DNA of 64,000 bases from Vicugna vicugna (lineage: Eukaryota): NCBI GenBank assembly GCA_013265495.1, contig MU060965.1, positions 744,001 through 808,000 of the forward strand, given 5' to 3'. Position numbers and translations under genes: made by a program. Shown here in pieces: positions 1 through 23,700 of the stretch. Under the pieces are notes generated by a model. It was not told the DNA's origin and made no database searches. It saw nothing but the letters and a program-made list of their open reading frames with translations. How positions within the stretch are numbered: the stretch's first letter is position 1; every line of letters begins with the position of its first letter.

Positions 1-1489
1 CAGGTCTCGAGAAAGAAGAGGGATGCCTGCCAGGTCTTGTGCAGCCCTCAGACAGACAGCATGGCTTCTGACCCCCAACGAGCCCCGAGTGCACCCTGGG
101 CCGTTGCTAGGTGGCCCCTGTGACATCAGCACAAAGTCAGAGGCCAGAGGTCAGCCCAGCAGCCCTTCATGCAGGCATGGGCTCCTTCCAGGGCCTCTGC
201 CTCTCCCCAGAGACGGCAGCAGGGCCAGACAGCGGGCGCCTTTGCACGCCTCCGCGGGCACTTCTGGTGCTGGGTCTGCTCAAGCCTTCGGTGGAATCTT
301 TTGTTTCCTTTTGGGGACGAAGGACGCAGGGGTGGTGGCTGTGGCTCCACTTGGAGTCCTGGGCCCTCGGTGGCATCCTGCATCCTCCCCCTGCCAGACG
401 GGGGTTCTCCACGTGGACTCGGCTCAGGGCCACACCTTTGGACACGCTCGGTGTTTCCAGTCTGAGCTGGGTGGCTGGCACTGCCCCAGCAGATGCCGGT
501 GGCAGGGCCCTCACAGCGGAGGTCCGCTTTCTGGCTCTGAGGCCTGGAGGTCCAGTATTGGGTGTAGGGGGGCTGGTTATCCCGGGCCTCTCTCCTTGGC
601 CGGCAGCAGCAGTCTCCTCCCAGTGTCCTCACGTGGCCATCCTCCACGTGTCTGTGTCCTGACCTCTTCTTAGAAGGACGCCAGTCAGACTGGCTCAGGG
701 CTACCCTCGTGCTCTCGCGTAACTTTAATCACCTCTTTATGCCTTGAAATGCAGCCACATTCTGGGGTCCTGGGAGTGAGGACACCACACGAGTGTTCAG
801 GGGACAGACTTCGGCCCCTAACACAGCCTCACAGACAATTTCTCCCACCCTGCTCAGCAGTTCTCTCCTCCCCACCCGAGACCACAGGCACAAGTCACAG
901 CAGGTGCTTCCCCCAGCACCCAGCCGACAGCCCTTAAATGTTCAGAATGAAGCAAATGTGACTAATTCCCTTTTTCCACATGCACATCCTCCCTTGAACA
1001 AGGCCACCCAGCCAGGTGGCTGGTGCAGGTCCCGCCATGGTGCCCAGGGACAGGGACGTGGCTCAGAGGCTCTGCTCCTGGTGTCAGGGTGACAGACGCA
1101 GCCAGGCTGGTGGGAAGCCGGGACAGCTCCTCTCTGGGTAGCAGGTTTCTGGAGACAGAGCCAGTGGACACAGACTGGGCCCCAAAAGCCCACCCCCCTC
1201 AAGCTGGACGCATCTCCGTCCACACTGGAGGTTTCCAGTAGGACACCTTCCCATGGCCCTGAGATGCCAACTCCACACCTTTCCATCCCAGGAAACATCG
1301 TGATTTCCAGCTCAGCCCAAAGCCCTACAGCTGGACCCCCCCGTCACCAAGGGACCTCACCTGCCATTGAGGGGCCCCCACCTGTCGTCAGGGCACATCA
1401 CGCAGCAGCCCACCTACCCCTCCACCACACACCCCCGTCTCCCATGTGTGCATGGCCAGCGGGCATGCCTGTGAAACCAAGCCAGTCTC

Positions 1490-2661
1490 AGAAAGAATAA
1501 AACGTCTATTTTAATTGACCAGTAAAATACATTGCAAATCATTAGTATCTTATAAACAGAAACATTAAGTTATAAATCCATGTTAAAAATTGCAGTTTTG
1601 TGCAGCCTAATAGCTATGTGTCCCAAGTTTCTTTTTTGCAACATTTTCCACCATTTTTGTGAGAACAGGTAACGCCACTGTGAGTCTGAACACAGTACCT
1701 GCAAAAGGCAGACAGAGGGCACAGGCCCCTGGTCCTCCATGTCTGAACAGGGCTCGTCAAAAGCCGTGAGGGCCGCTGGGGGGAAGTCAGCAACAGCTGG
1801 GGGCTGATGGCTGCATCCCGAGGCAGGACCCCGACTCCAGTGCAAAGCAGTGCTCGCAGCCTTCAGGGCTTCAGAGAGACGTGCTCCCGGCTCAGGTGTC
1901 TGCACCCCACGGGCCCAGGGCTCCACCCCTCCCTCTGTTTTCTCTGAGGACCTTTGTTTGGCTGCCGTGAGACACCTCTGTTCCCTTCTTCGTCCTCTGG
2001 GGGTATCCCAACCCCCTGAAAGGAGCAGGTTTGGATGCTCTGAGTTACTTGATGTCAAGGAGCTAATTAAAAAGTCCTTTAAAAACGTTAAGAAAATCAG
2101 CTTGAAAATAATGTGCATTCTATGTGTACAGTCTCCCCAGACGTCCACTGGGGCAGCGAACGTGGGTTCTACTTTCAGCCCCACTGGCAGCAAACAACAC
2201 CAGTCTGCTTGGTGTGGGGGCTGGGTGGACACCCAGCTCAGCCCGTCACCGGCTCCCGTGGCTGCTGGGGCAGGAGGCTCATAGGACAAGAGTGATGCTA
2301 ACAGTGTCCAGCTGAGTCGAGGCCGAGCGCTAGAGAGTGCGGCCCCCCAGAGACCAGCAGGGGCGAGAGTGCACAGGACGCAGGAACACATGCTCTGCAG
2401 AGGACGTGCAGTCCCCAGCACCTGTTCCAGAGAGGCCAGCTCGGGTCCCCTGCCTGGGTGGAATCAGGTGCACAGCTACTCCGGCAACCGCCCAGGAGTC
2501 CTGGAAATTCACGAGCTCAACGCCTGCCGTCTTGTGAGCGGCTGGAGTGCGGACCCCTCACCGGCTCCCGCCACTCCCGGGGCGATTCTCCCTCCTCCTT
2601 CCCAAGCATGGGCCTCCCTGGTGCGGCTCAGGGGCGTCCTGGGCCGGGCGTCCTGGAGGCT
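1490..2661 (-). other. RASA3: RASA3 3' UTR (left end approximate)
   Basis: Runs from the stop codon to an AT-rich block at about 1500-1660 that contains the putative poly(A) signal. Confidence 0.7.
1510..1515 (-). terminator. Putative poly(A) signal ATTAAA of RASA3
   Basis: Minus strand reads AATGTATTTTACTGGTCA-ATTAAA-ATAGACGTTTTATTCTTTCTGAGACTGGCTTGGTTTC, with an upstream UGUA element and a U/GU-rich downstream element. Confidence 0.7.
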
Positions 2662-2737
2662 TCACATGGTATGGGTGGGGATCTCAGATTGCTGCCTGAT
2701 GTAGCTCTGGAAGCTCTTGTCTCCAATGGGGTGCTCC
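2662..2737 (-). CDS. RASA3: RASA3 exon 24, coding part (canonical C-terminus)
   Basis: ctgcag|G GAG CAC...ATG TGA; 76 nt; [24 protein letters not shown]; stop at 2662-2664. Confidence 0.95.
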
Positions 2738-5700
2738 CTGCAGGGAAGCGGGGAGGAGAGGGTGAAGGCGGGTCACGGTGTGCGCACGCGTGGAGCAGGG
2801 GAGTCTTGTCTCCAATGGGGTGCTCCCTGCGGGGGAGCGGGGAAGAGAGGGTGAGGGCGGGTCACGGTGTGCCCACACGTGGAGCGGGGGAGTGGGAGTG
2901 GATGGCGCTCGGGCACAGTGGCACCCACGGGAAGTGTTCAGCATGGTGGCTCTGCCACGTTTAAGAAAAGGCAGCATTTCTAGAAGGTCGACATGGGTTC
3001 TCTCGATAGAGGCTGTTAAGGGGCCTGGAATGTGATGTGAACATTTGTGGAGCTGGGAGCAGAGATGGGGCAGTGTCCCTGGGGCCTCTCAGCATCCCGG
3101 GCAGCCTGGCCAGAGGTGGGGTCTCTTCCAGAGTCCTCACTTCCCTTCCCTGCCAGACCAAACCCAGGTCTCCCCGGAAGGAAGGAGGAGGGAGGGAGGA
3201 GGGAGGCAGAGGGTCTGGAGGGGCCGCACCGGGACACTGAGCGGCAGGCCTGGAGGTTGAAGTGAGACCCTGCTCTGAAGCAGGCAGGGGTCTGAGGCAG
3301 CCGCTCCCTGGCTCCCCGACATACTCACTGGCTCCCATACTTGGTTTTCTTGAACTTGTCCCGTTTGTACTGCGCGTGCTCCTGCTCCAAGGCCCCGACC
3401 CCAGCGATGACCTGCCTCAGGGTCTTGTAGGTCTCCTGGGGGTCGTCGATGATGAACGTGGAGTACTCCTCCTGCTCCGGCCCGTCGTACACGGACCTGC
3501 TCCCACAGGCCTCTGCGCGTCGGGGAGAGGCGGAGGTCAGCGCTGGGAGCCCAGGCAGGCGGCCCCAGAGCTGCATGGGGACGGGCTGACCGTTCGTGCA
3601 CATGCACACAAAGCAGAGCCACTCCAGGAGCTGGCTCATGCTGAACCCGAGTCCCTGAGGGTCCGACGTCCTGAGCGCCAGGGCCAGCCCTTCTCCAGGT
3701 GACCTGGCTCTGTCCACGCCCACTGGCTCCCCAAGCCAGAACAGGCAGACATCTGTCTGCTCCTGGGCCCAGGGTCAGTCTGGGGAGATGAACTTGAGGA
3801 AAGGGGTGCCGAGCTCCACCCAACACTCGTGAGGACGCGCCACGGCTGGACAAGCGGGGCACACGGTGGACAAGGAGCCGTCCTTGTGGGGCCACCTCTC
3901 AGCCAGTCTGCACCAGCAGCTCCCTAGGACCTCTGTCCCCCCACCTCTCAGCAGGTAAGTCTCTCATCAGACCTCCTCACTCCTGCCAAAGACCACACGG
4001 TGGCCTCTGGGCGCCCACCTGTCTGCTAACCCCTGAGCTGAGTCCTGTACTCTGGGGCCTCGGTGAGCCAGCATCAGGCCCCCCACCCTCGTCTGCAGCG
4101 TGTGCTAGTTCATCGCCACAGAGAGCTTCACTGTCTTTAAATCCAGCTCGGGGGAAAGCTCTTCTTACTGGAAAACCTCAAGTTTGTGCAAAGGGAAACT
4201 GGGAAGATTCAAAACTTCAAAGGAAAGGGGGTTCCTCACATGAGGAGTAAAGGAGTGGCGACCCGGGGCAACCGGGGCGAGTGAGCCGCACAGGGTGAGG
4301 TCCCGGAGCCAAGCGGCCCTGGCTACCTGCCTGGAGCCCCACTGGTTGTGATGACCAGGCCCCGGCAAGGCCCTCAAGCTCCAGAGCCTCAGGGATCCCT
4401 CTGGGAAGTGGGGGCCACTGAGAGACAGGACAGGAGTCACCGAAGGACCGAGATCCCAAGGTGGGGCGGGACAGGGTGCCAGCTGCAAGACCCCGGCCGA
4501 CTCAGCTCTGGGCACTGTGCAGACCGCTTCACAGGGCTGTGTTATAAAACCCTTGGATCAGCCCGGCAAGGTGGGGGTGGTGCGGCCCGCTCCTCAGGGA
4601 GGAGGTCAGGGCTCCCCAGCGTCGATGTGCCGTAGGTCTCGTAGCAGGTGGCAGGCTGGCTCTGAAGGAGACCCGTGCGTCCTGGTGAGGCCCGTCCCAG
4701 GGCACCAAGGAGCGTGGACGGGGGAGGGGTGCTGGGAGAGGCCCCGGATTAGTGGGAGGGAGCAGTTTCTAATTTTGCAAACATGAAGAAGGGAGGACCC
4801 ACGGCCAGCGTCAGAGGAAGGCTCGCGACTGGACCGCTGAACAGACTGCGAGCATGATGAGGACCAGACGGCACAAGCACACCCACTTCCTCTTCACGGC
4901 TTCCTGAAACTAAGGCTGGGAACCACTGGAGAGCGCGCGCTCACGCCAGCTCGGCCAGTAGCCTGTGACCGAGGAGCACACCTTGATGAGGTGGCAACGC
5001 GGCACCAAGACCTTCACCGCCCAGATGGGTCTACATCCTGTCATCTCTGCAGAAGCCCCACATGTCCCAGGGCCCTGCCTGCGCCCCAAGAGCTACCGCA
5101 ACTTGGGACGCTGGCCCTCACCTTGCATCTTCTCCAGTCTGCTCATGTACAAGCTGAAGAGGGAGGAGATGCGCTCCGTCTCCCGGTCCCCGTCGATGTC
5201 CAGCTGGATGTTGGCTGGGAGGCCGCTGCCCGAGCACCCCAAGAACATACGAGGGAAGTGTGAGTCGTCACGATACGGACTATTTAAAGGTCACTCAAGA
5301 TGGTAGAGGGACCTGGTGCTGCTCTTGTCCCGGACCAGGGCTGGGGCATTGGTCACGAGCATTTGGAAGTGACCACCCACAGCCTTGGAGGTACCCACAG
5401 ACTTGCCCAGACCTTTCTGCCACAAATAGTACAGACGCCCTGGTTGTGCGCCCTGAAGGGCGGTGGGCTGCCCAGGAGGGGTCGGTCCCTGTCCCCCGAG
5501 AGGCTGTGTGGGCCTCTGCTCCTGCCCCCACCCCAGCGCAGCCTCTAGGGGCAGCGGGACCCAACAGACGTTTATCCCGCGTCTCAGCTTCAGTGAAGCC
5601 GCGTCCCCTGTTCCCCCCTCAAGGCTGTGGGGGGGTCTGTCACTGTTCTCACAAGTCACATGGGGCTCGGGCGCCCAGGCCTACCCCCAGGACTGGCAGA

Positions 5701-8700
5701 GATGAACCCTCAGGAGGCCCAGCCGCCTCCGTTTCTGAAAGAGGGAGGGGGGTGCGCAGATGTTGGCGGGGAACTGAAGGCAGTGTGAGCAGGATGGTGG
5801 AAACTTCTAGACTCTTCTTGGAAGAAACAAGGCAGCACCCTCTCTGGGCCTTCTCCCTGCATGGAGACCCTCCTCCACTGCCCACGCCCTCCTCGAGGAC
5901 GGCCCGGACCCCCGGCAGAGCGCCCGAGGTCTGCGTGGAGCCTTCGCGGGCAGAGTCTCCTGATCGTGGGGAGAACTGCCTCGGAGGCTCGGCCTCGCAT
6001 GCAGCTGCCCAGTGGGCGGGGCTGCGTTTTAGCTCCAGTGCTGGCCCTTGGCCAAGCCTCCCAGTACACTTCACAAGCTGGACAACCGTGCCAGGCTGCA
6101 CTGGGCATCTGAGAGGCACCGACCTACCCGGTGCAGGGGGTGCAGCCGGTGGCTGTGTCCGAGGAGGCCCTGCAGCATAGCCAGTGGCCGTTGAGGTAGG
6201 CGGACGGGTGGTAGACTGTGAGCCGCTTCTGGTTGCACTGGCTCACTTTGGTGAGGATGTCAATCCAGGCCTTGGCCTCCACGCAGTTGTTGGCCTGGAT
6301 GTACAATGCCCGCTCAGGCTGGATGACCTGGAACATCTGCGGGGAGACGGGGACTCAGGGGCCGCACAGCAAACCCTCCCGCCCCCCTCGCCCACTCCAG
6401 GCAGGTGTTACCTCCCCTGTGAGGCTTCTCAGAGTCTCCACTGCCTTTTGTATTTCTTACTCATTCAACAAACATTCCTGAGTAACTTGCAGTGTCCTGG
6501 GGACATAGTGGTCCAAACATCCTGCCCTTGTCAGCTTGCAGCCAGCAAGAAGGACAATAATGAACACAAAGTGCGGGGACTGTGTGAGGGTGAAGACCTA
6601 ATGGGGGGTGGGCAGAGCCCTCCAAATAAACGATCCCCCAGCTGAGATCAGAAGGACGACCCAGGGTTCATTAAGCTGAGTGGGGAAAGCAGGGGTGTAA
6701 AGCCAGCAGCATGGGCAGTAGGTGTAAAGGCTGTGGGGCCAGGAGGGTTGGGCACTCCCAGCAGAAGCTGGCCAGGCTGCACACAGAGACGAGGCTGAGC
6801 AAGGGGGCTGGCAAGCCAGTGCCCTGGCAGGGCTGTGGGGGCTGGACTTGCCAGGAGTCAGGACAGCAAAGTCCATGGTGGCCTTCTGCAAGGGGGGTGG
6901 TGTGCACCCAGAGGAGAACAGGATTGGGGGGACTCCAGGAGGAGTCTGAGTCCAAGTTCCCAAGTAAATAGCCAGGACTCATTCAGAGATCGGAGGCTCC
7001 GCCCCCTACCGCACCCACACATGCACTGTTGCACAGGCCGCACACTGCACACTCCATGTGAGGCTGCAATCCCCAAAGGAGGGCAAGACTCTAGAAGGAA
7101 GCATTTTGTTCTGACTGTCCTCACAGGCTGGCCCCTCTGACAGGGCTTGGCATACAGCAGGCCTTGGAAAATGACTCTCAAATGGAAGAGGAGGTTGTCC
7201 TGGTAGTCAGCGTCGTGGAAGGCTACCTCTGAGGTAGGCAGCAGAAGAAACAGGCTGATGAAGAAGTGCTCAGATTAGGGGGTTATTCTCAACCCGATGG
7301 AATGAAGCCACTCACGCTGCTTCTAGAGTGCTCCCCACACTGGTTCCTTCTGCGGACGTTGGGGCCGTAGCCCACAGAGCCCCCATGCGGGGTTGGGGGA
7401 GTGATATCAGGCCCAGGGACGCCCGAGGTGAGGTGCCAGGGAGTCAACTTCCCTGAGGTCCAGAAAAGCGCCCCAGCCTAGCCACACGGTCGTCAGCTGG
7501 CCCAAGAAGTCGCCCAGAAGCCCAGGTATGAAGCCAGCGCAGGGCGCTGCACTGGGGCTGCCGTCTGTGGGCCGTGCTGGCCAGCCTGGGGCTCCCTCCA
7601 ACAGTCCAGCAAGCACTGCCCTCCGGGGACCGTGGGGCCAAGACCAGCCCCGGCCAGACGAGCAGATCCCCGGTGGCCACAGGCACCTACTGAACACCAG
7701 ACCACCCGGGGTACCCACGAGCACAAGCCAGATGGACACCAGGACCCTGAAGAGGGTGAGTGGTCAGCTGCTGGGGGCTGGGGGCCTGTGGCTGCTGGAG
7801 CGCGTGGCTCTGGGGGAGAGCCGTCCTCCCAGCGAGCGGTCGCTGGGGGCTCCTGGGGCAGGAGAAGGTTCAAGGGCAGCACAGAGCTGCCTGACACTGT
7901 CCTCAGCAGGGAGAACACGTTGTGGGGCCGCCCCTCCGCCCACTACAGCCCTCGGCACAGGAGGAGTGGTCCTCCAGCCTGGGACCACTTGGGAGTGCTC
8001 TCTCCCACGATGCTGGGCGGGCGGAGACCACACGGCCTGCAAATCCTCAGCCCAGTCACAGTCACGGTTTCTTTAAAGCTGGGAGACCAGGGATGATCGG
8101 CAGGATTCCACGTCTGGACTACGATTTGTTATTTCGTACTTATAGCCCCACGGTGCTTCGAAGAAGACTGCATGTGACTTACGTGAAATATAGCTAATGA
8201 AGTTGAAAAAGATAAAAAACATTTAGAAAACTAGGAAGAGAGAAGCAGAAATGGAGAGAGACTGGGAAGAAGGAAGAGCTAAGAGTGCAGATTTTCCGAT
8301 GGAAACAGAGCCCAGAAAAGCCCCTGGATCAGGCTCCGCACTGAGTGCCATGGGGGGTGCTCCCAGTTACTGCACCAGCCTGAGGCTGAGGCTGCTGGGA
8401 ACTTCCGTCCCCCTACAGAGACCAGGCCTGCGCCCACAGAGCAAGGTCGTCCCCACCAGGGGTGAAGCCTGTGCTCTCCCTTGGAGCCTTGTGGAGGGGG
8501 CAGGAGAGGATGCAGCGGCCTGTTTCCTCCCTGACAGCCTTTGGAGGTGCTCGGTGATCAGGAAATGCAGACACCTCCCGTCGGGTCCCCACAACACTGG
8601 GGAAGCGAGCACACAGCTGGGAACCCCAAAGCTGTGGGTGTGTGAATGGCCAGAAGCGGGCCTGATGTGAGGGCTCTCCCACAGCCTCGGTCCAAAGTCT

Positions 8701-11700: not shown

Positions 11701-14700
11701 ACAACTGGGCAATAATCACGTGGGTGTGACGTGCAGGCACCGAGGGAAAAGGAAGCCCCGACCTAGACCCCAGAGAGGTGCGTCCAGCAGCCCCGGGCGG
11801 CGAGAGCCCTGGACTCAGCGGTCCTGAGACGCTGCGAGCTCACCAAACAGGGTGAAACAGTGTGAAAGGGTTAATGGTCAATTTCACGTTATTTGGATTT
11901 TAACTCAATTTTTAAACAAGCAGCTCTGCTTCTGGGGAACAACGTGACTACGGGGCAGCGAGACTGCGTGACTTGAGTCCGATACTCACGTTTTTCACTG
12001 CGTCAGCGTATTTCTGCTCATTGAAGAATTCATAAAATGCAGCCATGTAGGATTCCTTAAAACTGGCCTAAAATGAAACAGGTCACTTAACGATGCATGC
12101 AGGTCTCCTGGCCAAACGTGGAAACGCTGGAGGCACAGGTGAGGACCAGCCTCAGCTGCGGTGACTGAGCGGAAGACGCCGGGTGGCCCTGGGGGGCGCT
12201 GCCCTGGGGGTGAGCCCCCTCAAGCTGCGTCTCACCAGGCTACCTCCGCCGGGCCCTTGTGAGGTCTTGTGACGAGTGACTCAGCACCCGCCTCTGGGGT
12301 CACTTGTTCCCAGATGCAGGCACTGGGGTCTCTTCTGTGAGCCGGGGGTAGGGAGGGGCTTCCTAAAGTGGGGAGTCAGGGCACCAGCAGGAACCCGGGG
12401 AGGGGTCTCCAGCAGCCGCCCCCACGCTGCACCCATGTCCACTGTGTCCATATGAGGGCATTTCGCTCCCCTAGGTGTGAAAATGAGGTGGGTTCTGTGC
12501 TGATCTCAGCCCCGCCGGGAGCTTCCAGCCACCAAAAACTAGGACTGCCTGCCAGGGAGAGAGGCTGGAGCTCACGAGCCACCCTACCTCTTTATTTTCC
12601 CCAGATTCACAGAAAGCTGAGTGTTTGCTCGAAGGGCTTGTCTACAGGGATCGGACCTGGCCCCTCATGGCCCTGCACAGAGCAGGAGGAGGAGTTCAGG
12701 GCTGGGGGCTTCTGTGGTCTCGGCTCAGCCCTTTCCAGACGGAGCCTAGCGGGCCCCTCCATGCAGGAGCCAGGTGCAGGCTCCATCCCCGAGGACGTCC
12801 CCACCTGGACCTTGCACCACTGCCTGTCATGAGGTGCCCTTGAGTGACAGGGCAGGGGAGATACAGATTTGTTATCGAAGGGGTAAAATGTGCTGGGGGC
12901 CCAGGGAGGGCAGGGGCTGCCCCTGGCTGCGTGTGGATGAGCCATCGGTCACCTCCACTGATGTTCAAGCCCCACTTGGGCCACCAAGGGCTGAGGAGGC
13001 AAGGTCTGGGAATCCACACCCGGCAGTGGAAGTATTAGCCACCTAGAGTGACATCACCACCTACAGGTGACACCATCACATACAGTGACTCCACCTCCTA
13101 CAGTGATACCACCACCTTCAGGTGATGTCACCACCTGCAGATGACATCATCACATACAGTGACGTCACCTCCTACAGTGACACCAGCACCTACAGTGACG
13201 TCACCACCCATGGTGACGCCATTGCCTGCAGCGACGTCACCGCCTACAGTGACGTCATCACCTACAGGTGACATCATCACTCACAGTGATGTCCCCACCA
13301 CCTGCTGTCGTCCTTTTCCTCCCAAAGAGTGGTTTCACAGCCTCGGGTGGAAGGTGCTTGAGCAGGTGGGGCAGTTACGCTCCTGGTCATGCAACTCCTC
13401 CCTGTCCCCCCCCACCATGTGCCGAAAAGAGAACTAAAGTCAGTGACTCACAGACTTGGACTTGGACAGGCTGCCGAGGGTCTGGATGGTCTTCGAGACG
13501 AGAGTCAGCGTCCTGGACGTCTGCGGGTCCTGCCAGGGACGGGGCCGGGGACAGGCTTACAGACAAGGTGTGACCCAAAGGGCTGACAAAACGAAGGCTA
13601 TCCCCTAAAAGCTGCCCCAGCATGAGCGTCGTCCGCGAGTGAGCAGATGAACACGCGGACACTATATCTGGAGGTGCCTCCAGACCGTCCCCTGAAGATG
13701 CAGCCCCAGGCCCCAGACCCCGCGTCTCCTCACACGCAGCAGTGTGACAAGAGCTGCTCAGGCCAGTGCAGGGCATATCCTGCCGGCCACCTCCCCTGTC
13801 GGCGCTCCCGCGTGACCGGCCTGGGGCCTCCCTGACCCTGAGTGCAGGTCGCGGACTTACTTCAAACCCACAAAAGCAGGAGTGGGCCCGTTCCCCTCGA
13901 ATCCCTCAGCCTAGGCTTTCCGCTTGGCGCCTTCTGTGAAAGCTCGGAGCCCGGCTCAAGAAATATCTGCTGACTGACTGGAGGGACGGCTGGATACCCA
14001 GGAGGTTGTAGATCCCCCATCCTCCCAGGGGCAGGGTTAGTCACGTAACAGCCACAGTGACACCCCAGTCACCCCTTAATAGTTTTACCGACACATCGTA
14101 GATTAAAAAGTCTTGAAACCTGCTTGAGACTAAGGAGTCTAGGGTAGGCGGCACGTTCACAGCCCAGTCACTACGTGGTGCTGCCTCTGCCCTCACACGG
14201 CTCCACAGACCCTGCCCAAGCCACCTGCTGGGTCAGGAGGGCTGGATGGTCCAGGCCTGGCCGACCAGTTCCCATGGCCGGATGCTGACGTACCGTGTGG
14301 TGGGGCGTGAGCTGGAAGAGGTTGGGGGACAGGATGGCTGGAGCGAAGAATCTCAGGAAGATGAAGCTGCTGACGGCCGTGTACCTCACGTCCAGGTCAT
14401 CTGCGGCCAGGACAGGGAGAGGACAGCAGTGGGCCTTGGGCGGGGCGCCTGTGACCAGAGCCCCACTCCTCTGAGGGCCTCCCGGAGGTGAGGGCCAGCT
14501 TGCAGCCCCTGCCCCGCTCTGTCTCTGTCTCTGCTGCTAAAAGCTCAGCTCTGTCCAGCAGCTGGGCTGCGACAGACAGGACCGCTCACCAGCCCTGGTG
14601 CTGCGATGCCGAGATGGCTGGGTGGGTGGTTTGCCACAGCTGAGCAGGAGGGTATGACTTGTTCATCTCCTCTCAAAGGGGTCTGGGGCTCAGGTGTGCT

Positions 14701-17700
14701 GGGTAACTGCCCTCCCAGTGCCGGACGGAGCCTCACTCCCTGAAAGCAGGGCTCCTGTCCGTGGAGGGCCCAGTACAGGCCCCATTGCTGGAGAGGACGC
14801 AGTGCCCAGCAGGCGTGGGGCCTTCTGTCTGGCCTGTGGGGATCGCCCTGGGGGCTGCAGCACCACACACTGCGCTGACTCACGGCTCCCTGGGGAAGGG
14901 TGGGCAGGGTTGGGGCGGGGCCTCTTGGACCAGGCAGGGCACCAAATGGCACTGCCCTCTCCTCGGCCTGGGAAGCCTGGCCCAGGCCGTGCTGGCACGC
15001 CACGTGCAGGCCCTCAGGGAATCTGACGCCCGCCTCCGGGGCAGGACCCTGCTTTGCCCCCGCAGAGGTCTGTACAGGGTGGCTCCTGGCAGCCCCCTGA
15101 GGAACCAGCATAACGGAAAAGGAGACTCTCCTTTGGGTTCCCTCCCGACCCAGTGACACAAAGGGCTCATCCTGTCTTTCTGGAAAATGCAGCAAAGCAG
15201 AGTCCAAGGACACTGGGTGCTGAGCTGAAAGGTGGCTTCTCTTGCTGCAAAGGCCCGAATGAAACACTGCGACACAGCGCGGCCCTAGCTCACACAGGGG
15301 TGAGCGCAGACGGGGGAGCCCTGGCAGCCCAGGGCACTTACCTTGGAAGCGCTTGGCGGCTGCCTCTCGCAGGGAGAAGAAAATGTCACACATGACAGTG
15401 GGGCAGCTCACCCCCGACTTGGTAATGACGTTGAAGATGCGGTCAACATACTGCCGCAGGTTCTCCTGTAATGGGGGGGCGGGGTGATGAGCGCTGCCTG
15501 CACCCGGCCCTCCCTCGGCTGACCCGCTGGCTGCTCAGAGCCCCCCACCACTGCGGAGAGGTAAGGGCAGAAGAAGGGGAGGGGACAAGGGAGGGGAGAG
15601 GGCAGGAGAGGAGAGAAGGCAGGAGAGGGGAGGAGGCNNNNNNNNNNNNNNNNNNNNNNNNNNNNNNNNNNNNNNNNNNNNNNNNNNNNNNNNNNNNNNN
15701 NNNNNNNNNNNNNNNNNNNNNNNNNNNNNNNNNNNNNNNNNNNNNNNNNNNNNNNNNNNNNNNNNNNNNNNNNNNNNNNNNNNNNNNNNNNNNNNNNNNN
15801 NNNNNNNNNCAGGAGAGGGGAGGAGGCAGGGGAGTGGGAGGGGTCAGGGGGGGGGAGAGGGAGGGGAGGGGACGGGAGGGGAAGGGAGGGGGAGGGTTGA
15901 CTCCCGGTCACAGGGAAGGACCCGGGTGCTGGCCAGTCACAGTGACTCATGGAAACAACTAGAGATGAGGGGGCATGTTGCGTTTCCTCCGCCCTGCCCC
16001 CCCATCAGCCTTCATGAAGAAGCCACATGGAAAGATTAAACAAGGATTCTGCTCTTTTAAAAAGTGGGCCAGAGCTCTGGGAGCAGCAGGAGGCGGCCCA
16101 GGTGGGGACCCATGCTTGCTGAGGTGAGGAGCCGGCTCCACCCCACAGGGGAGCTCCCGGCTCTTTGGGGAGCACGAGGGTGCAGAGCGGGTTAGCAGCA
16201 AAGTGGAGGCAGACGAGGTGGCAGCTGGGCGGTGAGGCTGTCCCTGAACATCTGCCCTCACCCGCCCTCCTGCTGGGCCCCATCCCTCCGGCCTCACCAT
16301 GTTGCTCTCCAGGCTTTCATGTTCCTTCAGCCGCACGGGGTCAATCTCACAGGACTTGTGACTCTGACAAATCTGCAAAGAGCATTCACAACCCAGAGAG
16401 TGTGAGCCCACTGCAGAGCGCCAGCGGGTGGACAGCCCCGCGGACATCGCAGTGGGTCCAGAACAGCCACCACGTGACGGACGCCGCAAGGAGCACGTGG
16501 GGTCGTGGCCAGGACACTGAGGGGTGCGAGGCCTCAGGCCCTGGGGGAACAGCCTTTCCTAAGACTGTTCTGCATGAGATCAGGTTCACCAAGTTTAGTA
16601 ATGTTCTCACTTTAAAGTTCTGCCCGGATTTGGCACAGAGGTCAAACCAGAACCATATCCTCAATGGTCTCTCATTGCTTTTGCGACACTTCTGGGGATG
16701 CGCTGCCTACACTGGCGTCCCCGGCGGGCGGTGTGAGAGAAGCTGTCCTCTGGAGGGGAGGCCAGTCACTCCTCCCTGGTTGTCTGACCACCGGTGGGAG
16801 ACAGCAGAGGCCATCTCCGCCCACCTGGCGAACTTGGGCGGGGGGTGTCCTCTGAAGGACGGGTTTTCTCTCCCATGTCCTTCTATCTTAGCAGAAACAT
16901 GAGCTTTCTTAAGTGTTTGTCTGATTTGAGAAAACGTGGAAGGATCTGGGACTCACTGGCAGGTCCCCAGGGGCGGCCGGGGAGAAGCTGACGGGGAAGT
17001 AGGGTCTGCGGGCTCCGGGCCCTGTCCCCCCGCCTTGCCCTCACCTCCTCAATGGTGGGCTTGAGGGTGTCATGCAGGTACTGCATCCCTGCCAGCTTCA
17101 TCGTCTCGTCGATGCACTTGGATGTCAGTGAGTTTCCTCGGAAAATGGTGTTGGGGTCCCTGCACAACAGTCACCAGTAGCGAGGTGTCCCAGGCAGAGG
17201 CTGCCCTGACCGACGCCTCACAGCTGGGAGTCCTGAGCTGGGCTCGCCTGCCTGTGCAATGAACCCATCCACCGCCAAAGGCCAACACACCCACGGCCAC
17301 CACCAACGGGCGCCTCCTCGTTCTGCGCTTTGAGGGCCCTTCTGCTCCTCTGGGTCTAGGTCAGCACAGGAGGTCACAGGGCACCCTCCACCAGGGCACA
17401 CTCCACATCCTTCTGTTCTGACGGTCCCAGGGCGCCCCGCCCCAGCAGAACCCGCCTCCCTGGAATGGCCACAGGCCCTGGAGCCAAGGCAGCCCGGCCT
17501 CTGCCGTGGGCTTGAGGTGGGCTTAAGACTGATTCGCAGCTCCCACCTCAGGCACCGAACCCCTCGGGGCAACGGGTGCTCCTCACCCCTTCCTGCCTTG
17601 AGGCCTGGGGTTTCCAGAGAAAAAGCACATCTTTGAAATGGGGAGTGGGGAGTGTATCTCTGGAGGAAACCTGTCCCCGGGAATCCTCCAGCGCCTGGCC

Positions 17701-20700
17701 CCCTGCCCTGCCCCTCACCGGACTCAGGCCTGACCCGGGGCCACACTCACTGGGTCCGCCGGACCTCGGCGCTGGCGATAGCGCAGATGAAAGGCACCAC
17801 CCGGCCATAGTGCAGGAGGAGCCGCACCAGCGGGACTGCCGCCTCCTGCTTCTCCCTGCACACCTCGCCCAGGATGTGGGCTGCAGACGCCGAGACGGGC
17901 TGGGGAGACAGCGGGTGAAGGAGGGTGAAGGAGCCCAGACCCGCGCAGCCCACTAGCTCGGTGGTCCCTCCCATCAAAGTGAATGTGCTCTTAGTTGAGG
18001 CAGAAAAACACATCTTTCATGAAAACCCCCATCAAAACCTCCAATCTACACACGTGCTCCGGGTGGGCCTGCTGGGCCTGTGCCTCCCCTGCGCCCCCAC
18101 GTCCAGCACCAGGGCCGGCGAGCAGAGGACTCATGACCTTGGGGTCCCCGTCAAACTAAGGGTAAGTCGCCAGCCATGCTGGGCTACCCCCAGCTCTGGA
18201 CGCAGTGGGTGTGAGGGCTCCCAGCCCAGCAAAGGGGGCGCAGCTGGCCCTGAGCACGGGGGCAGGGCCCTGGGGCGTGCCGCACACGCAGTACCTCCAC
18301 GTCCGCAGACCTCAACAGCAGGTCCCGCAGCGGGCCGTAGTAGTCGGAGGAGAAGACGTGGTCTTCTGTGTAGACCACGTTCAGCCGCAGAGACCCCAGG
18401 TCCCCCGGCTTCAGGCTCTTACTGCCATTGTCTCGGGGCTGAAGGAAGTACCTGGCACAGGACAAGGGGACGAGGCAGCGTGAGGCAGCCACACCCTCCA
18501 GGGGCTAGTTCCCTCCAGGGTCAGTCCACACCCTGCTCCATGTGGTCCTCCAGCCTCCGGTGGTGTAGATTCTGAGGAGAGGGGCTCTGGGAGATTCTGC
18601 AGGACACCCCCTGCAGGGTATGTGCACCTGGGGGGGTCTCCCACCTGACACCCCCTGCCGGGTCTGTGCGCCTGGGGGGGGTCTCCCACCTGACACCCCC
18701 TGCCGGGTCTGTGCACCTGGGGGGGGTCTCCCACCTGACGCACCCTGCAGGGTCTGTGCGCCTGGGGGGGGGTCTCCCACCTGACATCCCCCTGCAGGTT
18801 CTGTGCACCTGGGGGGGTCTCCCACCTGACACCCCCTGCCGGGTCTGTGCACCTGGGGGGGGTCTCCCACCTGACACCCCCTGCTGGGTCTGTGCACCTG
18901 GGGGGGGTCTCCCACCTGACACCCCCTGCTGGGTCTGTGCACCTGGGGGGGGGTCTCCCACCTGACGCACCCTGCAGGGTCTGTGCAGGCGGCCCTGCAT
19001 GGGATGTTTGTTATCAGGCTGACCACAGAGCCTCAGACTCAGGTGGAGGTGGGAAAGTGGAACAGTGGCAGGGACAGGCAGCCTGAGAGGGGTGAGCCGT
19101 GAGCAGCTTAGGAGGACGCCGGGGTAATTTACTCGTGAAGGTGAACACCCAGCAGCTGCCTGTGATGAGCAGAGCCTAGATGAAACGACTCTCACAAACA
19201 TGTGGTAGAGCTCCTGACGTCAGAGGGGACGGTGAGCTTGTGCTGCTGGCTGGGCAGAGCCCGGGCACGTAGTCACCTCGCTGTGCTCCTGACCAGACAC
19301 CCTTTCTCTTCCGCTCACCTGGGAGGCCCTGCAGGCACCCTGTCTACTCTGAGCGCACGGCCAGGTGGCCTGAGGTGCAACGTGGGCAGAGTGTGTCTGG
19401 CTGAGGCACCGACCTCCTGGGACTCAGGTCACATCTCTGTCTTGAGGCCACGGCCATCAGCCCAGCAGGGCCTCCTGCGGTCCAGCCCTGCTGGGCCCCA
19501 GGCTTAACGTCTGCACAGAACTGAATCACCAGTTCCGGTTCCTGGTGGCGGGACGCCCCTTGGGGCACAAGCAAACCAGTATCACAGAGAGAGCCTGCAG
19601 GTATGCAGGGCTCCGAGTGTGCTGTGCCATGTGTGTGCCGTGTGTGTGCCGTGTGTGGCGTGTGACCCGCACCCCCTCCCACCTGAGTCTGTTAAAGGAG
19701 ATGTGGGAAGTGAGGCCGTGGCGACCAAGGTGTCTGAGGCGCCTCGCACTGGCGTTTCCTCCCTGTGATGCCATGTGACCTATGAACTACTGTCACAGGA
19801 AGCCAAGGTGCCACAGGGACAAGAAGGGACACGGGGAGCAGAAACCTGGCCCCCAGGACGCATGGGGGTGGCCGAGACCCCAGTCGGGCATAAGTGGACA
19901 TTCGTCTGAAACCGGCAGGCCTGCGCCCTGCACCAGGGCACCTCCAGAGACGGAGGGTCCAGAGTGCAGTGGGAGGGGCGGGGGGCAGAGCAGGCGCGGC
20001 CCCCTCAGTGACCCGCCAGGGGACTCTGCCTGAGGCTCAGCCACCACCCTTCAGATGCTTGCTCAGCGTGGCCCCCCATCCTCTGAGCCCCGTGCGGACG
20101 GGAGTGGGAGGCCCCCCATGCCCTCACCAGGCCTCGTAGGGGCTACACTGCCGCAGCACTTTGAGTGGGATCCGCAGCTCTCCCAGAAACTCGTCCCCGA
20201 ACTTCAAGTTGCTGGCGTTCCAGAGGTCCACCCTGGAAAACACCAGTCATACGGGCCTCTTAGTGGGAGGCCGGAAGGGGCAGGGGGTCCCTGCACCCCT
20301 GCTCTCTCTGCAGAGAACCCAGAGCTTTTGGTCCCCCACTGGGGCACAGCCGGCGTATGAGGTCCCCCCGCCCTCGTGTCAGGCGGGGCAGGAGGGGCTG
20401 CAGGGTGCTGAGGCCATCAGCGTCCGTGTCCTGCACCCGGGAGGCCTGGTGGAGCAGGACCACGGCCCCGGGGGGCACGGTGCCCTCGGCCTGCAGGACT
20501 CGACGCAGGGTGAACAAGGACTGGCTCCCCTGGGCACGTGCAGAGAACGGCGCCGCCAGGGATGGGCCAGGCTGCCCACCTCACGGCCAGGACGCCCCAC
20601 GTCCATCATAGGAGGACATGTGGTGTCCCTGACGCCTCTCCCTCCACCTGCACTTGGTCCCTGCACCTGCCAACCTCGTGACCCGCCTGTGTGATCGCGG

Positions 20701-23700
20701 CTGGGAGGCTGACGGGGCGGCCACGTCTCGGTTGCCCCGTGTGGAGAGCCCATGCCCTCCTGCTGAGTGTCCTGACCCTCACTCAGCCTCTTCCCTCGGA
20801 CAGAATGCTCACTGCTCCCTTCAGTTTGGGGCTGTATGTGCATGACAGACGGGCGGCATTCCCGTGTTAACATTGCGCACACCCCACAGGCTGTAATTTA
20901 ACCCCTGGTCACTCAGGACTGAAGACCTGAGACCAGCTCGACCACACTGGCGTGTCATGGGGGAATTCCAGGAGATGATACCACCCTTCTTCCCTGCCAG
21001 GCTGAGCGCAGCAGCAGTCTGGGCGAGGGGGACTCAGGGGACGCATGTCCCACATCACAGCACCTTCCAAACAAAGGAAACAGAGACTGACCCTCCAGGC
21101 GGCATCTCAGCGATGAGACAAACCAGCCACCAGGCTGCCTCGTTTCACAGATATTCTCAGTTCACAGACACACCTAGGACGTCCCTTGAATTCAGAGCCC
21201 AGTCCTTCAGAAGCACTCCTTTCTCTGGGCGAAGGGCAGGGCTGGTGTCCAGGGAGCAGCTGGGGCACAGCACGCTTAGAACGAGGCCTGAGGCCTGGAC
21301 TTGCCTGGACACAGCACTTGGGGTCACTCTGCTTCTGGTTTACATTTTGAAATGGAAGACTGAAACTGACTGGAAACACTCAGGACGCGGCTCAAACCGA
21401 GACGTGTGTACAAAGGCCCGTGGAGGTGGAGGGACCCGCAAAGGGGAGGGAAGAGCCTCGGCCGACCCTGCACCTGCTGGTCGCCCCCCGCGCCCAGAAC
21501 CCCACTCCAGGGCCTGGTCACTGCTCAGAGCCAGGTTTTTGGGAGGAACCCAGAGTCCGCCCCCAACTGAATGCCCACGGTGCTTCCAGGGAACCTCAGG
21601 TGCCTCAGGAAAGCAATTTTCAACCACGTCAAGACTGGAGAGTCCCTCCGGTTCTTGGGGACGGGGCCGGTTAGGCTTCACTGTGGCCAGCCCCCCACTG
21701 TGACTCGGGTCTCCCACCCTAGTGGGGGCTACTACTCAGGGCTGCGTGGCCTTCAAGTGGACGCTGCGACCCTCGACCTCTAGGGTGACGTGTGCAGGCT
21801 GCACACCGACCTCCCTGCGAGGCTAGAGCGGCAGGACCCCGTGCCAGGTCAGGCCGCGCCCGCCTGAGGGGCAGGAAGCCTTGGCCTCCAAAGGTGCCGC
21901 GGAGCCGACCATAAAGCCTGGGCTGCCCATCCAGCCGCCTCCCAGCGACCTGGGGAGTTCCCGGCTCTAACTTCCAGCACTCCAGTGTTAAAGTAACAGA
22001 GAAAGAGGAACCCCTCTCTCTGCACCCCCACCATGTCAGGACAAAACAAAGGCAGGCGGGAGGTGCGATGGGCGGGGTGCAGCCGCCAGCAGGGACCTGC
22101 CCGCACACGCGCTCACCGGATCTCAAGCTTGTCCACGTCCTCCTCCTCGAAGTCGAAGTGGGACTTGCGGCTGTAGCTGCAGGGTCGGGTCACCTGGGGG
22201 CGGGGGGACAGCGCTGGGCCTGCCGCCCACTCACACCCACACTCCGTCCTGCATGCACACCCTGCCTCTGGGGACCCACTCGGCTGGAGTCTTGTGGCCC
22301 AGCTGCAAAGGGACCGTCCAGGGACAGAGGCGGCTCTTCACCTCAGCCTCGGGTCCTCCCTCCACACCCTCTCCAGGGCTACCAGACGGGGAGATTGCAG
22401 CCCCCGCACCTGAGAGACGTGGGGGCCAAGAACAGTGGGGAAAGGCCCAGGTCCTCTGCTGGCCCTAACGCACCCTTCACCTCATTTCCCAAAACTCCGC
22501 CTTCTGGCCCCAGCCTCACTACACCTAGACAGACCCCCGCAGCCTGGTGCTCCACACGCCCGCTGGGCCTGCAGACTCCCGGGGAAGCCCTGCCCGCGGC
22601 CCGCTGCCCGCCTGGGACAGGGCGCCTGGGACAAGCTCGGGGCCTCTGGGCCTTCTTCCTGCTGTCCTGCCCTGGGCGCGCCGTCCGACCTGTCCGGGGG
22701 ACCCATATTCTGAGAGCTCCAGGGGTGTCTTGTCTGCCTGCAGCTGCTCTTTTGCATCAAGACCTCACTATTTCTGGGGAAACAAGCCCCCTCCCGGCTC
22801 AGGGAAGAGGCAGAAGACACAAAGCCCCAACCTAACAAACGGTAAACCCCCAAAGGCTCGATAACTTGGAAAGTATTAATTTGTCAGCATTCAACTGAAA
22901 ACTGGGTTCTGCTGGAAGCAACAAGTGGCCTTTCTTCCAGGGAAATCAGAGCTGCAGGCTGGAGGGGGTCTCCCGTGTGCCAGATGGAACTCTTGGAAGG
23001 GCGTGCTGGAGGCCTTCGGACCCAGATTCTGCCAGACTCTGCCAGACTCTGGGGGTGGGTTCAATCACACCGGCCCCCAAACACCAACCTCAAAGTAAAA
23101 CACTTCGTCGAACTGGGGGTTGTTGGTCTTCTTTTTCACTTTTGTCTTCTTTGCTTCCGACCTGCAGTCGTGGGAGGAAGGATTAGGGTGGAAACAGCAT
23201 GGCTGACACTAAACCTGCCAGCCTGAGGTGAGCCACCAAGTGCGTGAGCAACGCATCTCCGAAGGTTCCTGTTTGTCTCTGAGCCCAGATGGTATGCAAA
23301 CCAGGAACCTCTACTGAGCCAAAAATACTCGCTGTGAAGAACACAAGGTTTCTTTCTCAGGAAGCAACTTCGGGGCAACAAAGGACACAAAATCCTCCAT
23401 GTCTGGGCTCCCCACGCCCCCACTGAACGACCCTCATCGCCTCCCATGCCCACGCCCTCCCCCGGCCACACTTGCCTGTACGGTCCTGCCAGTGTCACCG
23501 TGGCGTAGGGGTCACACTGCCCGTTCACGATGGGGAGGCCCTGGCACTCAAGGATCCTGAGGAGAGAGGTGGGAAGGGTCAGCAGGGGACAGGAGGCCCA
23601 CAGCCACCTCCCAAGACTGCCCCAGGGTCCGAGCTGTCAGCTGTCTCAGCAGCTTCGAGCCAAGAGCCACGCGTGGGCAGCGAGCTGACCGTCCCTGCCC

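What the first reader, a model, noticed from the sequence alone, without database searches (positions are those of the whole stretch)
2628..2892. Duplicated, intact splice acceptor for the last exon could give a frameshifted Pro-rich C-terminus
Seen: an 89-bp tandem duplication copies the putative branch point, pyrimidine tract, AG and first 23 nt of exon 24. The upstream copy keeps a good acceptor (CCGTGACCCGCCCTCACCCTCTCTTCCCCGCTCCCCCGCAG|G at 2826). Splicing exon 23 to it adds 89 nt and gives [65 protein letters not shown] (65 aa, stop 2628-2630) instead of the 24-aa canonical tail. The stop is in the last exon, so it would escape NMD. The 23 exon-derived nt are identical between copies, while the 66 intronic nt have 7 differences (suggestive only). 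Established: 3' splice-site choice often favours the first competent AG after a branch point. Inference: this may be a lineage-specific isoform with PxxP and S/T-P motifs, or the upstream site is actively silenced.
Basis: partly seen in the sequence, partly recalled or inferred. Interest (0 to 1): 0.8.

Follow-up and report, generated by a model that had tools for sequence, protein, structure and literature searches.

The report
Duplicated last-exon splice acceptor in RASA3
An old 89-base tandem duplication, seen only in this lineage, gives the last exon of the RASA3 gene two complete and almost equally good splice acceptors, but I could not obtain RNA evidence, so the proposed frameshifted protein tail remains an untested possibility.

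Summary
An 89-bp tandem duplication (2715-2803 and 2804-2892, 82/89 identical, no indels) copies the branch-point candidates, pyrimidine tract, AG and first 23 exon bases of the last coding exon of RASA3 (minus strand). The downstream site (2737) gives a 24-aa tail conserved from fish to mammals. At least five other vertebrate lineages, including gray whale, have one module, so the duplication is lineage-specific. The divergence between copies suggests it is millions of years old.

By motif the upstream site is competent: it is the second-best acceptor candidate in the intron and outscores three real neighbouring RASA3 acceptors. It has mild handicaps: two fewer uridines near the AG, a stronger predicted hairpin over the AG, and intron-like sequence downstream.

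Whether it is used is untested. Two very large protein collections hold no spliced ORF with the new tail, but this species is hardly represented in them.

Most likely reading: the canonical site dominates and the upstream site gives a minor, NMD-immune by-product. First-stage notes report similar duplicated acceptors elsewhere in this genome; none has been checked.

The parts
2804..2892 (-). Upstream copy of the 89-bp tandem duplication. It holds branch-point candidates (A at 2862 in GUGAC and at 2852 in CUCAC), a C-rich pyrimidine tract, the AG at 2828-2827 and 23 exon-derived bases (2826-2804).
2715..2803 (-). Downstream copy, which is the canonical 3' splice site module. Its branch-point candidates are A at 2773 and 2763, its AG is at 2739-2738, and the last exon starts at 2737.
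   Evidence: tblastn of orthologue P0024 places the tail at 2739-2665.
3329..3512 (-). Penultimate coding exon ('exon 23'), encoding [11 protein letters not shown]...KYGSQ. The donor is CA|GTGAGT, with GT at 3328-3327.
   Evidence: The peptide matches 87 RASA3-type ORFs.
2738..3328 (-). Last intron as canonically spliced (591 nt). It would be 502 nt (2827-3328) if the upstream acceptor were used.
2662..2737 (-). Canonical coding part of the last exon. It encodes the 24-aa tail [24 protein letters not shown], with the stop TGA at 2664-2662.
   Evidence: 12 of 24 positions invariant from fish to mammals
2628..2826 (-). Hypothetical coding part if the upstream acceptor is used: 65 aa, of which 58 are new, with the stop TGA at 2630-2628.
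   Evidence: No transcript or protein evidence was found.
2822..2838 (-). Predicted local hairpin (GCUCCC / GGGAGC, 5-nt loop) enclosing the upstream AG, at -11.3 kcal/mol.
2733..2749 (-). The same hairpin at the canonical AG. It is weakened to -8.4 kcal/mol because the -9 C-to-U difference makes one pair a G.U wobble.
1495..2661 (-). 3' UTR of about 1.17 kb, with the variant polyadenylation signal ATTAAA at about 1517-1512.
   Evidence: read from the sequence. The poly(A) site itself is inferred.
6127..6336 (-). Exon carrying the end of the PH domain and the BTK motif.
   Evidence: Pfam PF00779, E = 3.5e-15
14174..14536 (-). Open frame containing a RasGAP-domain exon with the FLRFFAPAI motif.
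   Evidence: Pfam PF00616, E = 2.1e-7, above the gathering score

Best explanation
A real 89-bp tandem duplication, specific to this lineage and probably millions of years old, straddles the last intron/exon boundary of RASA3. It created two complete 3' splice-site modules 89 nt apart, each with its own branch-point candidates, pyrimidine tract and AG.

The downstream module is the productive one, because it yields the C-terminal tail conserved across vertebrates. The upstream module is a competent competitor by sequence but is mildly handicapped:
- It has two fewer uridines at -5 and -9.
- Its AG sits in a tighter predicted hairpin.
- Only 23 nt of real exon follow it before intron-like, pyrimidine-rich sequence.

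I therefore expect the upstream site to be a minority choice, roughly 1-30% of transcripts. The resulting mRNA would carry 89 extra bases and a frameshift, would escape NMD, and would be a tolerated by-product rather than an evolved isoform.

Shown: the duplication, its anatomy, its restriction to this lineage, the motif strengths and the conservation of the canonical tail. Inferred: which site wins, and by how much.
For: - The duplication and all coordinates are confirmed.
- The gene is RASA3. It has BTK and PH motifs and a RasGAP exon, and source names for related proteins say so.
- Gray whale and at least four other lineages have a single module, to which both window copies align.
- The canonical tail is intact and conserved from fish to mammals.
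- Rough consensus-matrix scores are 10.92 bits (downstream) and 9.95 bits (upstream). The next best AG in the intron scores 7.98, and the real acceptors of exons 21-23 score 9.74, -1.19 and 4.38.
- Both copies have identical branch-point candidates at -36 and -26, and each AG has its own AG-free zone of 65-79 nt.
- The hairpin over the AG is -11.3 kcal/mol upstream and -8.4 downstream. The AG unpaired probability is 0.14-0.35 upstream and 0.50 downstream, in three different sequence contexts.
- At -5 and -9 the whale matches the upstream copy, so the canonical copy's uridines are derived.
- No ORF with the new tail exists in the searchable part of 5.8 billion proteins or among 1.84 billion representatives.
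Against: - There are no RNA data at all for this locus, so the split between the two sites is a prediction.
- The handicaps are small: about 1 bit and about 3 kcal/mol.
- The upstream motif CCCCGCAG is also used by the real exon-21 acceptor and by the whale's functional site.
- From memory of classical duplicated-site experiments (Reed and Maniatis 1986), the site nearer the donor can be preferred when all else is equal.
- The negative protein searches carry little weight. No ORF of this species appeared even for the genomic exon-23 frame, and full-length isoforms would be hidden inside clusters.
Confidence: 0.45

Rival explanations
1. The upstream acceptor is effectively silent (under 1% use). 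It would be a pseudo-acceptor kept out of play by the hairpin over its AG, its C-rich tract and the lack of exonic enhancers after the first 23 nt. The duplication would then have no consequence for the transcript.
For: All three handicaps point the same way. The duplication has persisted long enough to gather 7 differences in a gene whose tail is conserved across vertebrates. No trace of the alternative tail exists in protein collections.
Against: The upstream site outscores three genuine RASA3 acceptors nearby and has an intact branch-point candidate and AG-free zone. Sites this good that lie 89 nt from a used site are rarely completely unused (general knowledge, not tested here).
Confidence: 0.28
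2. The upstream acceptor is used in a large share of transcripts (30% or more). This would give a stable mRNA and a lineage-specific RASA3 isoform whose last 17 residues are replaced by 58 new Pro/Ser-rich ones, possibly with a function of its own.
For: The upstream site is competent and retains the ancestral functional motif. The stop lies in the last exon, so by the established rule there would be no NMD. Proximity to the donor may favour it (from memory, not tested).
Against: It would remove a tail conserved from fish to mammals. The new tail is simply a translated pyrimidine tract followed by out-of-frame exon, with no relatives. The canonical copy, not the upstream one, carries the derived tract-strengthening changes. 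The identity of the 23 exon-derived bases is not significant (P = 0.11).
Confidence: 0.15
3. The duplication is an assembly artefact, or an allele that is not fixed, so that many or most individuals carry a single acceptor module.
For: Public DNA runs fall into two groups of word share, 0.86-0.89 and 0.92-0.95. A single-copy allele would give 0.87-0.89. The best holder may be the assembly's own sample.
Against: The two copies differ at 7 of 89 positions and share no 31-mer, which a simple assembly stutter would not produce. The run at 0.95 is unlikely without the duplication (P = 0.012-0.05). Runs under three organism labels reach 0.92. SNPs alone could explain the lower group.
Confidence: 0.1

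Closest known systems
Alternative 3' splice sites (A3SS events) arising from duplication of acceptor sequence, ranging from NAGNAG tandem acceptors to disease duplications across intron/exon boundaries such as USH2A c.3812-3_3837dup (PMC11311777)
   Same: Two AGs compete for one donor, and the copies arose by local tandem duplication. The outcome depends on relative site strength and context. In the USH2A case the alternative acceptor was used only at a low level.
   Different: Here the whole module is duplicated (66 intron bases with branch-point candidates and tract), not just a few bases. The sites are 89 nt apart, so each has its own branch point. The exon is terminal, so exon skipping is not an option and the frameshift product escapes NMD. 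Usage has not been measured.
Branch point to AG scanning and AG exclusion zones (Gooding et al. 2006, PMC1431707)
   Same: Each acceptor here has an AG-free zone (79 and 65 nt) that contains its branch-point candidates, as that model expects.
   Different: The model explains which AG is chosen after a given branch point. It does not decide between two duplicated branch-point/AG modules, which is the real question at this locus.
RASA3 (GAP1-IP4BP), a GAP1-family dual Ras/Rap GTPase-activating protein (PMC7588890)
   Same: The window encodes RasGAP, PH and BTK-motif exons and a C-terminal tail that matches named RASA3 proteins.
   Different: None of the other lineages whose locus reached the acceptor has the duplicated last-exon acceptor. 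A library search for papers naming RASA3 with 'alternative splicing' and 'C-terminal' listed 12 of 14 papers, and none had RASA3 in its title or abstract. I did not open them.

Membership tests
RASA3 / GAP1-family RasGAP gene | RasGAP catalytic domain | tested here: met
   PF00616, E = 2.1e-7 and 31.5 bits (cut-off 28.3), on the frame at 14174-14536(-) with the FLRFFAPAI motif
RASA3 / GAP1-family RasGAP gene | C-terminal PH domain followed by a BTK zinc motif | tested here: met
   PF00779 at E = 3.5e-15. The PH fragments score below the cut-off because the domain is split over exons. There are also matches to BTK PH-TH structures.
RASA3 / GAP1-family RasGAP gene | Two N-terminal C2 domains | tested here: inconclusive
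   A C2-like frame at 23139-23636(-), containing 'QCDPYATV', gave no Pfam hit on its own. The whale orthologue's gene call does carry C2.
RASA3 / GAP1-family RasGAP gene | Orthology to RASA3 rather than RASA2, RASA4 or RASAL1 | tested here: met
   The exon-23 and tail peptides are 83-98% identical to proteins that sources name 'RAS p21 protein activator 3' (Myotis) and 'ras GTPase-activating protein 3-like'.
Alternative 3' splice site (A3SS) event | Two AG acceptors downstream of one donor, each with a pyrimidine tract and a plausible branch point | tested here: met
Alternative 3' splice site (A3SS) event | Both junctions observed in transcripts | not testable with these tools
Searches for protein-level traces were negative but weak.
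Functional lineage-specific protein isoform | The new reading frame is conserved or constrained in relatives that carry the duplication | not testable with these tools
   No close relative's sequence could be fetched. The best exon-23 DNA identity was 92%, and all outgroups are single-copy.

The most novel reading that the evidence does not exclude
The upstream acceptor takes a large share of RASA3 transcripts in this lineage. A Ras/Rap GAP whose C-terminal tail is conserved from fish to mammals would then be made, in part, with 58 new Pro/Ser-rich residues born from a translated pyrimidine tract, and this state would have been maintained for millions of years. Together with the other duplicated acceptors noted in this genome, it would also be a natural experiment on how a cell chooses between two complete 3' splice sites.
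Probability: 0.12. Interest if true: 0.5.

Novelty: new member of a known kind. Interest (0 to 1): 0.3.

Why it matters
If the upstream site is used, part of this animal's RASA3 would lack a tail that has been kept since fish. RASA3 is a Ras/Rap1 GTPase-activating protein (PMC7588890). That would be a clean case of new coding sequence arising from intron signals.

If the site is silent, the locus shows that a full, high-scoring acceptor module can be ignored. That is useful for calibrating splice predictors.

In either case the effect is confined to one gene in one lineage, and a few thousand RNA-seq reads would answer the question. The broader value may lie in the set of similar duplicated acceptors that first-stage notes report in GC-rich genes of this genome. 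If those are real, they are repeated natural competition experiments.

Tried and rejected
1. RNA and DNA read laying. I chose X7, X14, X23 and X27 on window:1450-3600. No junction data could be obtained.
2. Exon-23-anchored search of 5.8 billion proteins. It returned 87 ORFs, mostly unspliced genomic frames ending KYGSQ. The four spliced ones (P0016, P0019, P0024, P0069) and two spliced cluster members (P0098 whale, P0100 Myotis) all carry the canonical tail, and none carries the new tail. None came from this species.
3. Alternative-tail searches. No candidate turned up among proteins of 42-135 aa. Among the representatives, only shifted-frame genomic ORFs of other mammals (P0102, P0103) matched.
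4. Fetching relatives. Only distant mammals and fish were found, and no sister species, so the duplication could not be dated by phylogeny and the new frame could not be tested for constraint.
5. Identifying the host order from SINE signatures and self-similarity. The window is almost free of interspersed repeats. The only hint is that the tail resembles the whale's.
6. Considered and rejected: re-splicing of the 89-nt insert. The exon 23/upstream-exon junction does not recreate a GT donor, and the GTs inside the insert would leave an intron of about 50 nt or less (read from the sequence).
7. Considered and rejected: a structured RNA or an opposite-strand gene at the site. There were no Rfam hits in 1-8000, and only one weak inverted repeat.
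8. Literature. I found no report of this RASA3 event and no direct precedent for a fully duplicated terminal acceptor module.
Full report
**What is there**

The minus strand of the window's first 15 kb or more carries the 3' part of RASA3.
- An exon with the end of the PH domain and a BTK motif lies at 6336-6127 (Pfam PF00779, E = 3.5e-15; BTK-type structures).
- A RasGAP-domain exon lies within 14174-14536 (PF00616, above the gathering score).
- The peptide of the penultimate coding exon matches 87 database ORFs. Related proteins are named by their sources 'RAS p21 protein activator 3' (Myotis) and 'ras GTPase-activating protein 3-like'.
- tblastn with orthologue P0024 maps the last four coding exons to 6336-6127, 5225-5123, 3512-3329 and 2737-2665.
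- I did not verify that these are exons 21-24 of 24.

**The observation**

Tandem Repeats Finder and the repeat finder agree on one 89-nt unit in two head-to-tail copies, 2715-2803 and 2804-2892, with 82/89 identity and no indels.

Read on the minus strand, each copy carries, from 5' to 3':
- 66 intron-derived bases. They hold the same two branch-point candidates: GUGAC with its A at -36, and yUCAC with its A at -26.
- A C-rich pyrimidine tract.
- CAG|G.
- The first 23 bases of the last exon.

- The donor is CA|GTGAGT after 3329.
- The upstream exon start is 2826 and the canonical start is 2737.
- The canonical stop is at 2664-2662 and the frameshift stop at 2630-2628.

The seven differences lie at -60, -51, -47, -29, -18, -9 and -5. 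Three are CpG transitions, three are other transitions and one is a transversion. That none falls in the 23 exon-derived bases has probability 0.11 by chance, so it says nothing about selection.

**Is the duplication real DNA?**

The two copies share no 31-mer, and an assembler stutter would not create seven substitutions.

Public DNA runs labelled as several closely related organisms hold 0.86-0.95 of the sampled words of 2500-3400. A single-copy allele would hold only 0.87-0.89. The best run, at 0.95, is unlikely without the duplication (P = 0.012-0.05). The runs at 0.92 are not decisive, and the group at 0.86-0.89 is what a single-copy allele would give. I therefore consider the duplication real (about 90%), but a presence/absence polymorphism is an open lead. 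Direct confirmation was lost together with the read-laying run.

**Evolution**

Loci fetched through the protein hits reach the acceptor in the following cases:
- gray whale (L006)
- two unidentified mammals (L005, and L011-13)
- a lineage only 74% identical in exon-23 DNA (L016 and L017)
- a lineage only 79% identical in exon-23 DNA (L018)

Each has a single module, and both window copies align to it. The duplication therefore arose in the window's own lineage. Judging by the tail sequence, that lineage is nearest to cetartiodactyls, but this is a weak inference.

No closer relative could be found. The only clock is the divergence between the copies: 7.9% in all, or 4 non-CpG changes in about 80 sites. 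With textbook mammalian neutral rates of 1-2.2e-9 per site per year, this suggests roughly 10-25 million years. The Poisson range is about 3-60 million years. Gene conversion, or the high mutability of this GC-rich region, would bias the estimate in either direction. This age is an inference.

At -5 and -9 the whale reads C, like the upstream copy. The canonical copy's two uridines there are therefore derived.

**Which acceptor should win?**

Here each AG has its own AG-free zone (79 and 65 nt) containing its own copy of the candidates. If the upstream branch point is engaged, the upstream AG will be used. If the downstream one is engaged, the canonical AG will be used. The decision is therefore taken when the tract and branch point are recognised.

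Points that make the upstream site look competent:
- On a rough consensus matrix (frequencies recalled from memory, so approximate) it scores 9.95 bits, against 10.92 for the canonical site.
- The next best AG in the intron scores 7.98.
- The genuine acceptors of the three preceding exons score 9.74, -1.19 and 4.38.
- Its CCCCGCAG motif is the one used by exon 21 and by the whale's functional site.

Points against the upstream site:
- It has two fewer uridines close to the AG.
- A perfect 6-bp hairpin (GCUCCC/GGGAGC) encloses its AG. It is predicted at -11.3 kcal/mol, against -8.4 for the canonical copy, where the -9 change makes a wobble pair, and -3.5 to -5.1 in the outgroups. The AG unpaired probability is 0.14-0.35 upstream and 0.50 downstream, in three context sizes.
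- After 23 nt, the 'exon' that follows it is the second copy's branch point and pyrimidine tract. That is intron-like sequence and lacks the purine-rich elements of the real exon (inference from composition).

All of these effects are modest.

**Functional constraint**

The canonical tail is intact and has 12 of 24 positions invariant from fish to mammals. The downstream site must therefore be used productively.

The new tail's Pro/Ser richness is what one gets by translating a C/U tract and then an out-of-frame exon. It has no relatives beyond shifted-frame genomic ORFs of other mammals. In the genome this frame is closed 12 codons upstream of the AG and has no start codon. Any database protein joining KYGSQ to this tail would therefore have been strong evidence of splicing, and none exists. 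That absence is weak evidence, for three reasons:
- Even the genomic exon-23 ORF of this species is missing from the hits.
- Length limits excluded long ORFs.
- Full-length isoforms would be merged into the canonical clusters.

**Conclusion**

The proposed isoform remains untested.

My probabilities are:

| Reading | Probability |
|---|---|
| Canonical site dominant, upstream site a minor NMD-immune by-product | 0.45 |
| Upstream site essentially silent | 0.28 |
| Upstream site a major isoform | 0.15 |
| Artefact or non-fixed allele | 0.10 |

The event belongs to a known kind: alternative 3' splice sites born from local duplication. It would be a new instance of that kind. Interest is moderate to low until junction counts exist.

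First-stage notes list several more tandemly duplicated acceptors in GC-rich genes of this genome, including LAMA5, ARHGAP39, PRKAR1B and KIF16B. They are unchecked. They suggest a regional tendency to duplicate rather than anything special about RASA3, and together they could make a useful test set.

Noticed in passing
window 2500-3400 (public DNA runs): The word shares of DNA runs fall into two groups, 0.86-0.89 and 0.92-0.95. A single-copy allele would give 0.87-0.89. The duplication may therefore be polymorphic, or a copy may have been lost again by unequal exchange in some individuals or labelled relatives.
   Followed up: partly
window 18603-18987: A 45-nt unit is repeated 8.5 times (92% matches, also readable as 136- or 181-nt units), and each unit carries a run of about 8 G on the plus strand. 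The array lies in a RASA3 intron and is the strongest tandem array in the window.
   Followed up: no
window 13039-13289: A minisatellite with nested periods of 18, 36 and 74 nt and 74-80% matches.
   Followed up: no
window 15638-15809: A run of 172 N, which is an assembly gap or masked stretch. I left it as it is.
   Followed up: no
window 5225-5240 (minus strand): The acceptor of the exon encoding [19 protein letters not shown] has almost no pyrimidine tract (GGGGTGCTCGGGCAG|C). It scores about -1 bit on the rough matrix, yet the exon is conserved. RASA3 acceptors in this GC-rich region are far from the consensus.
   Followed up: no
L006 (gray whale GCA_029890035.1): The deposited whale annotation splits RASA3. 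One product of 1206 aa carries C2, RasGAP, PH and BTK. A separate 224-aa 'hypothetical protein' holds intron-derived residues plus the last two exons. This looks like an annotation artefact.
   Followed up: no
window 28000-51000, plus strand: AATAAA occurs 38 times in the window against about 4 expected, mostly on the plus strand between 28 and 51 kb. These are probably AT-rich element fragments lying antisense to the gene.
   Followed up: no
Future sessions should lay window:2400-3600 instead.
   Followed up: yes
P0102, P0103: Gene callers have produced ORFs in other mammals that read the single RASA3 acceptor and last exon in the same shifted frame ('...AGSTP.ETRASR.TSG...'). These are unspliced genomic frames, not isoforms.
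   Followed up: yes
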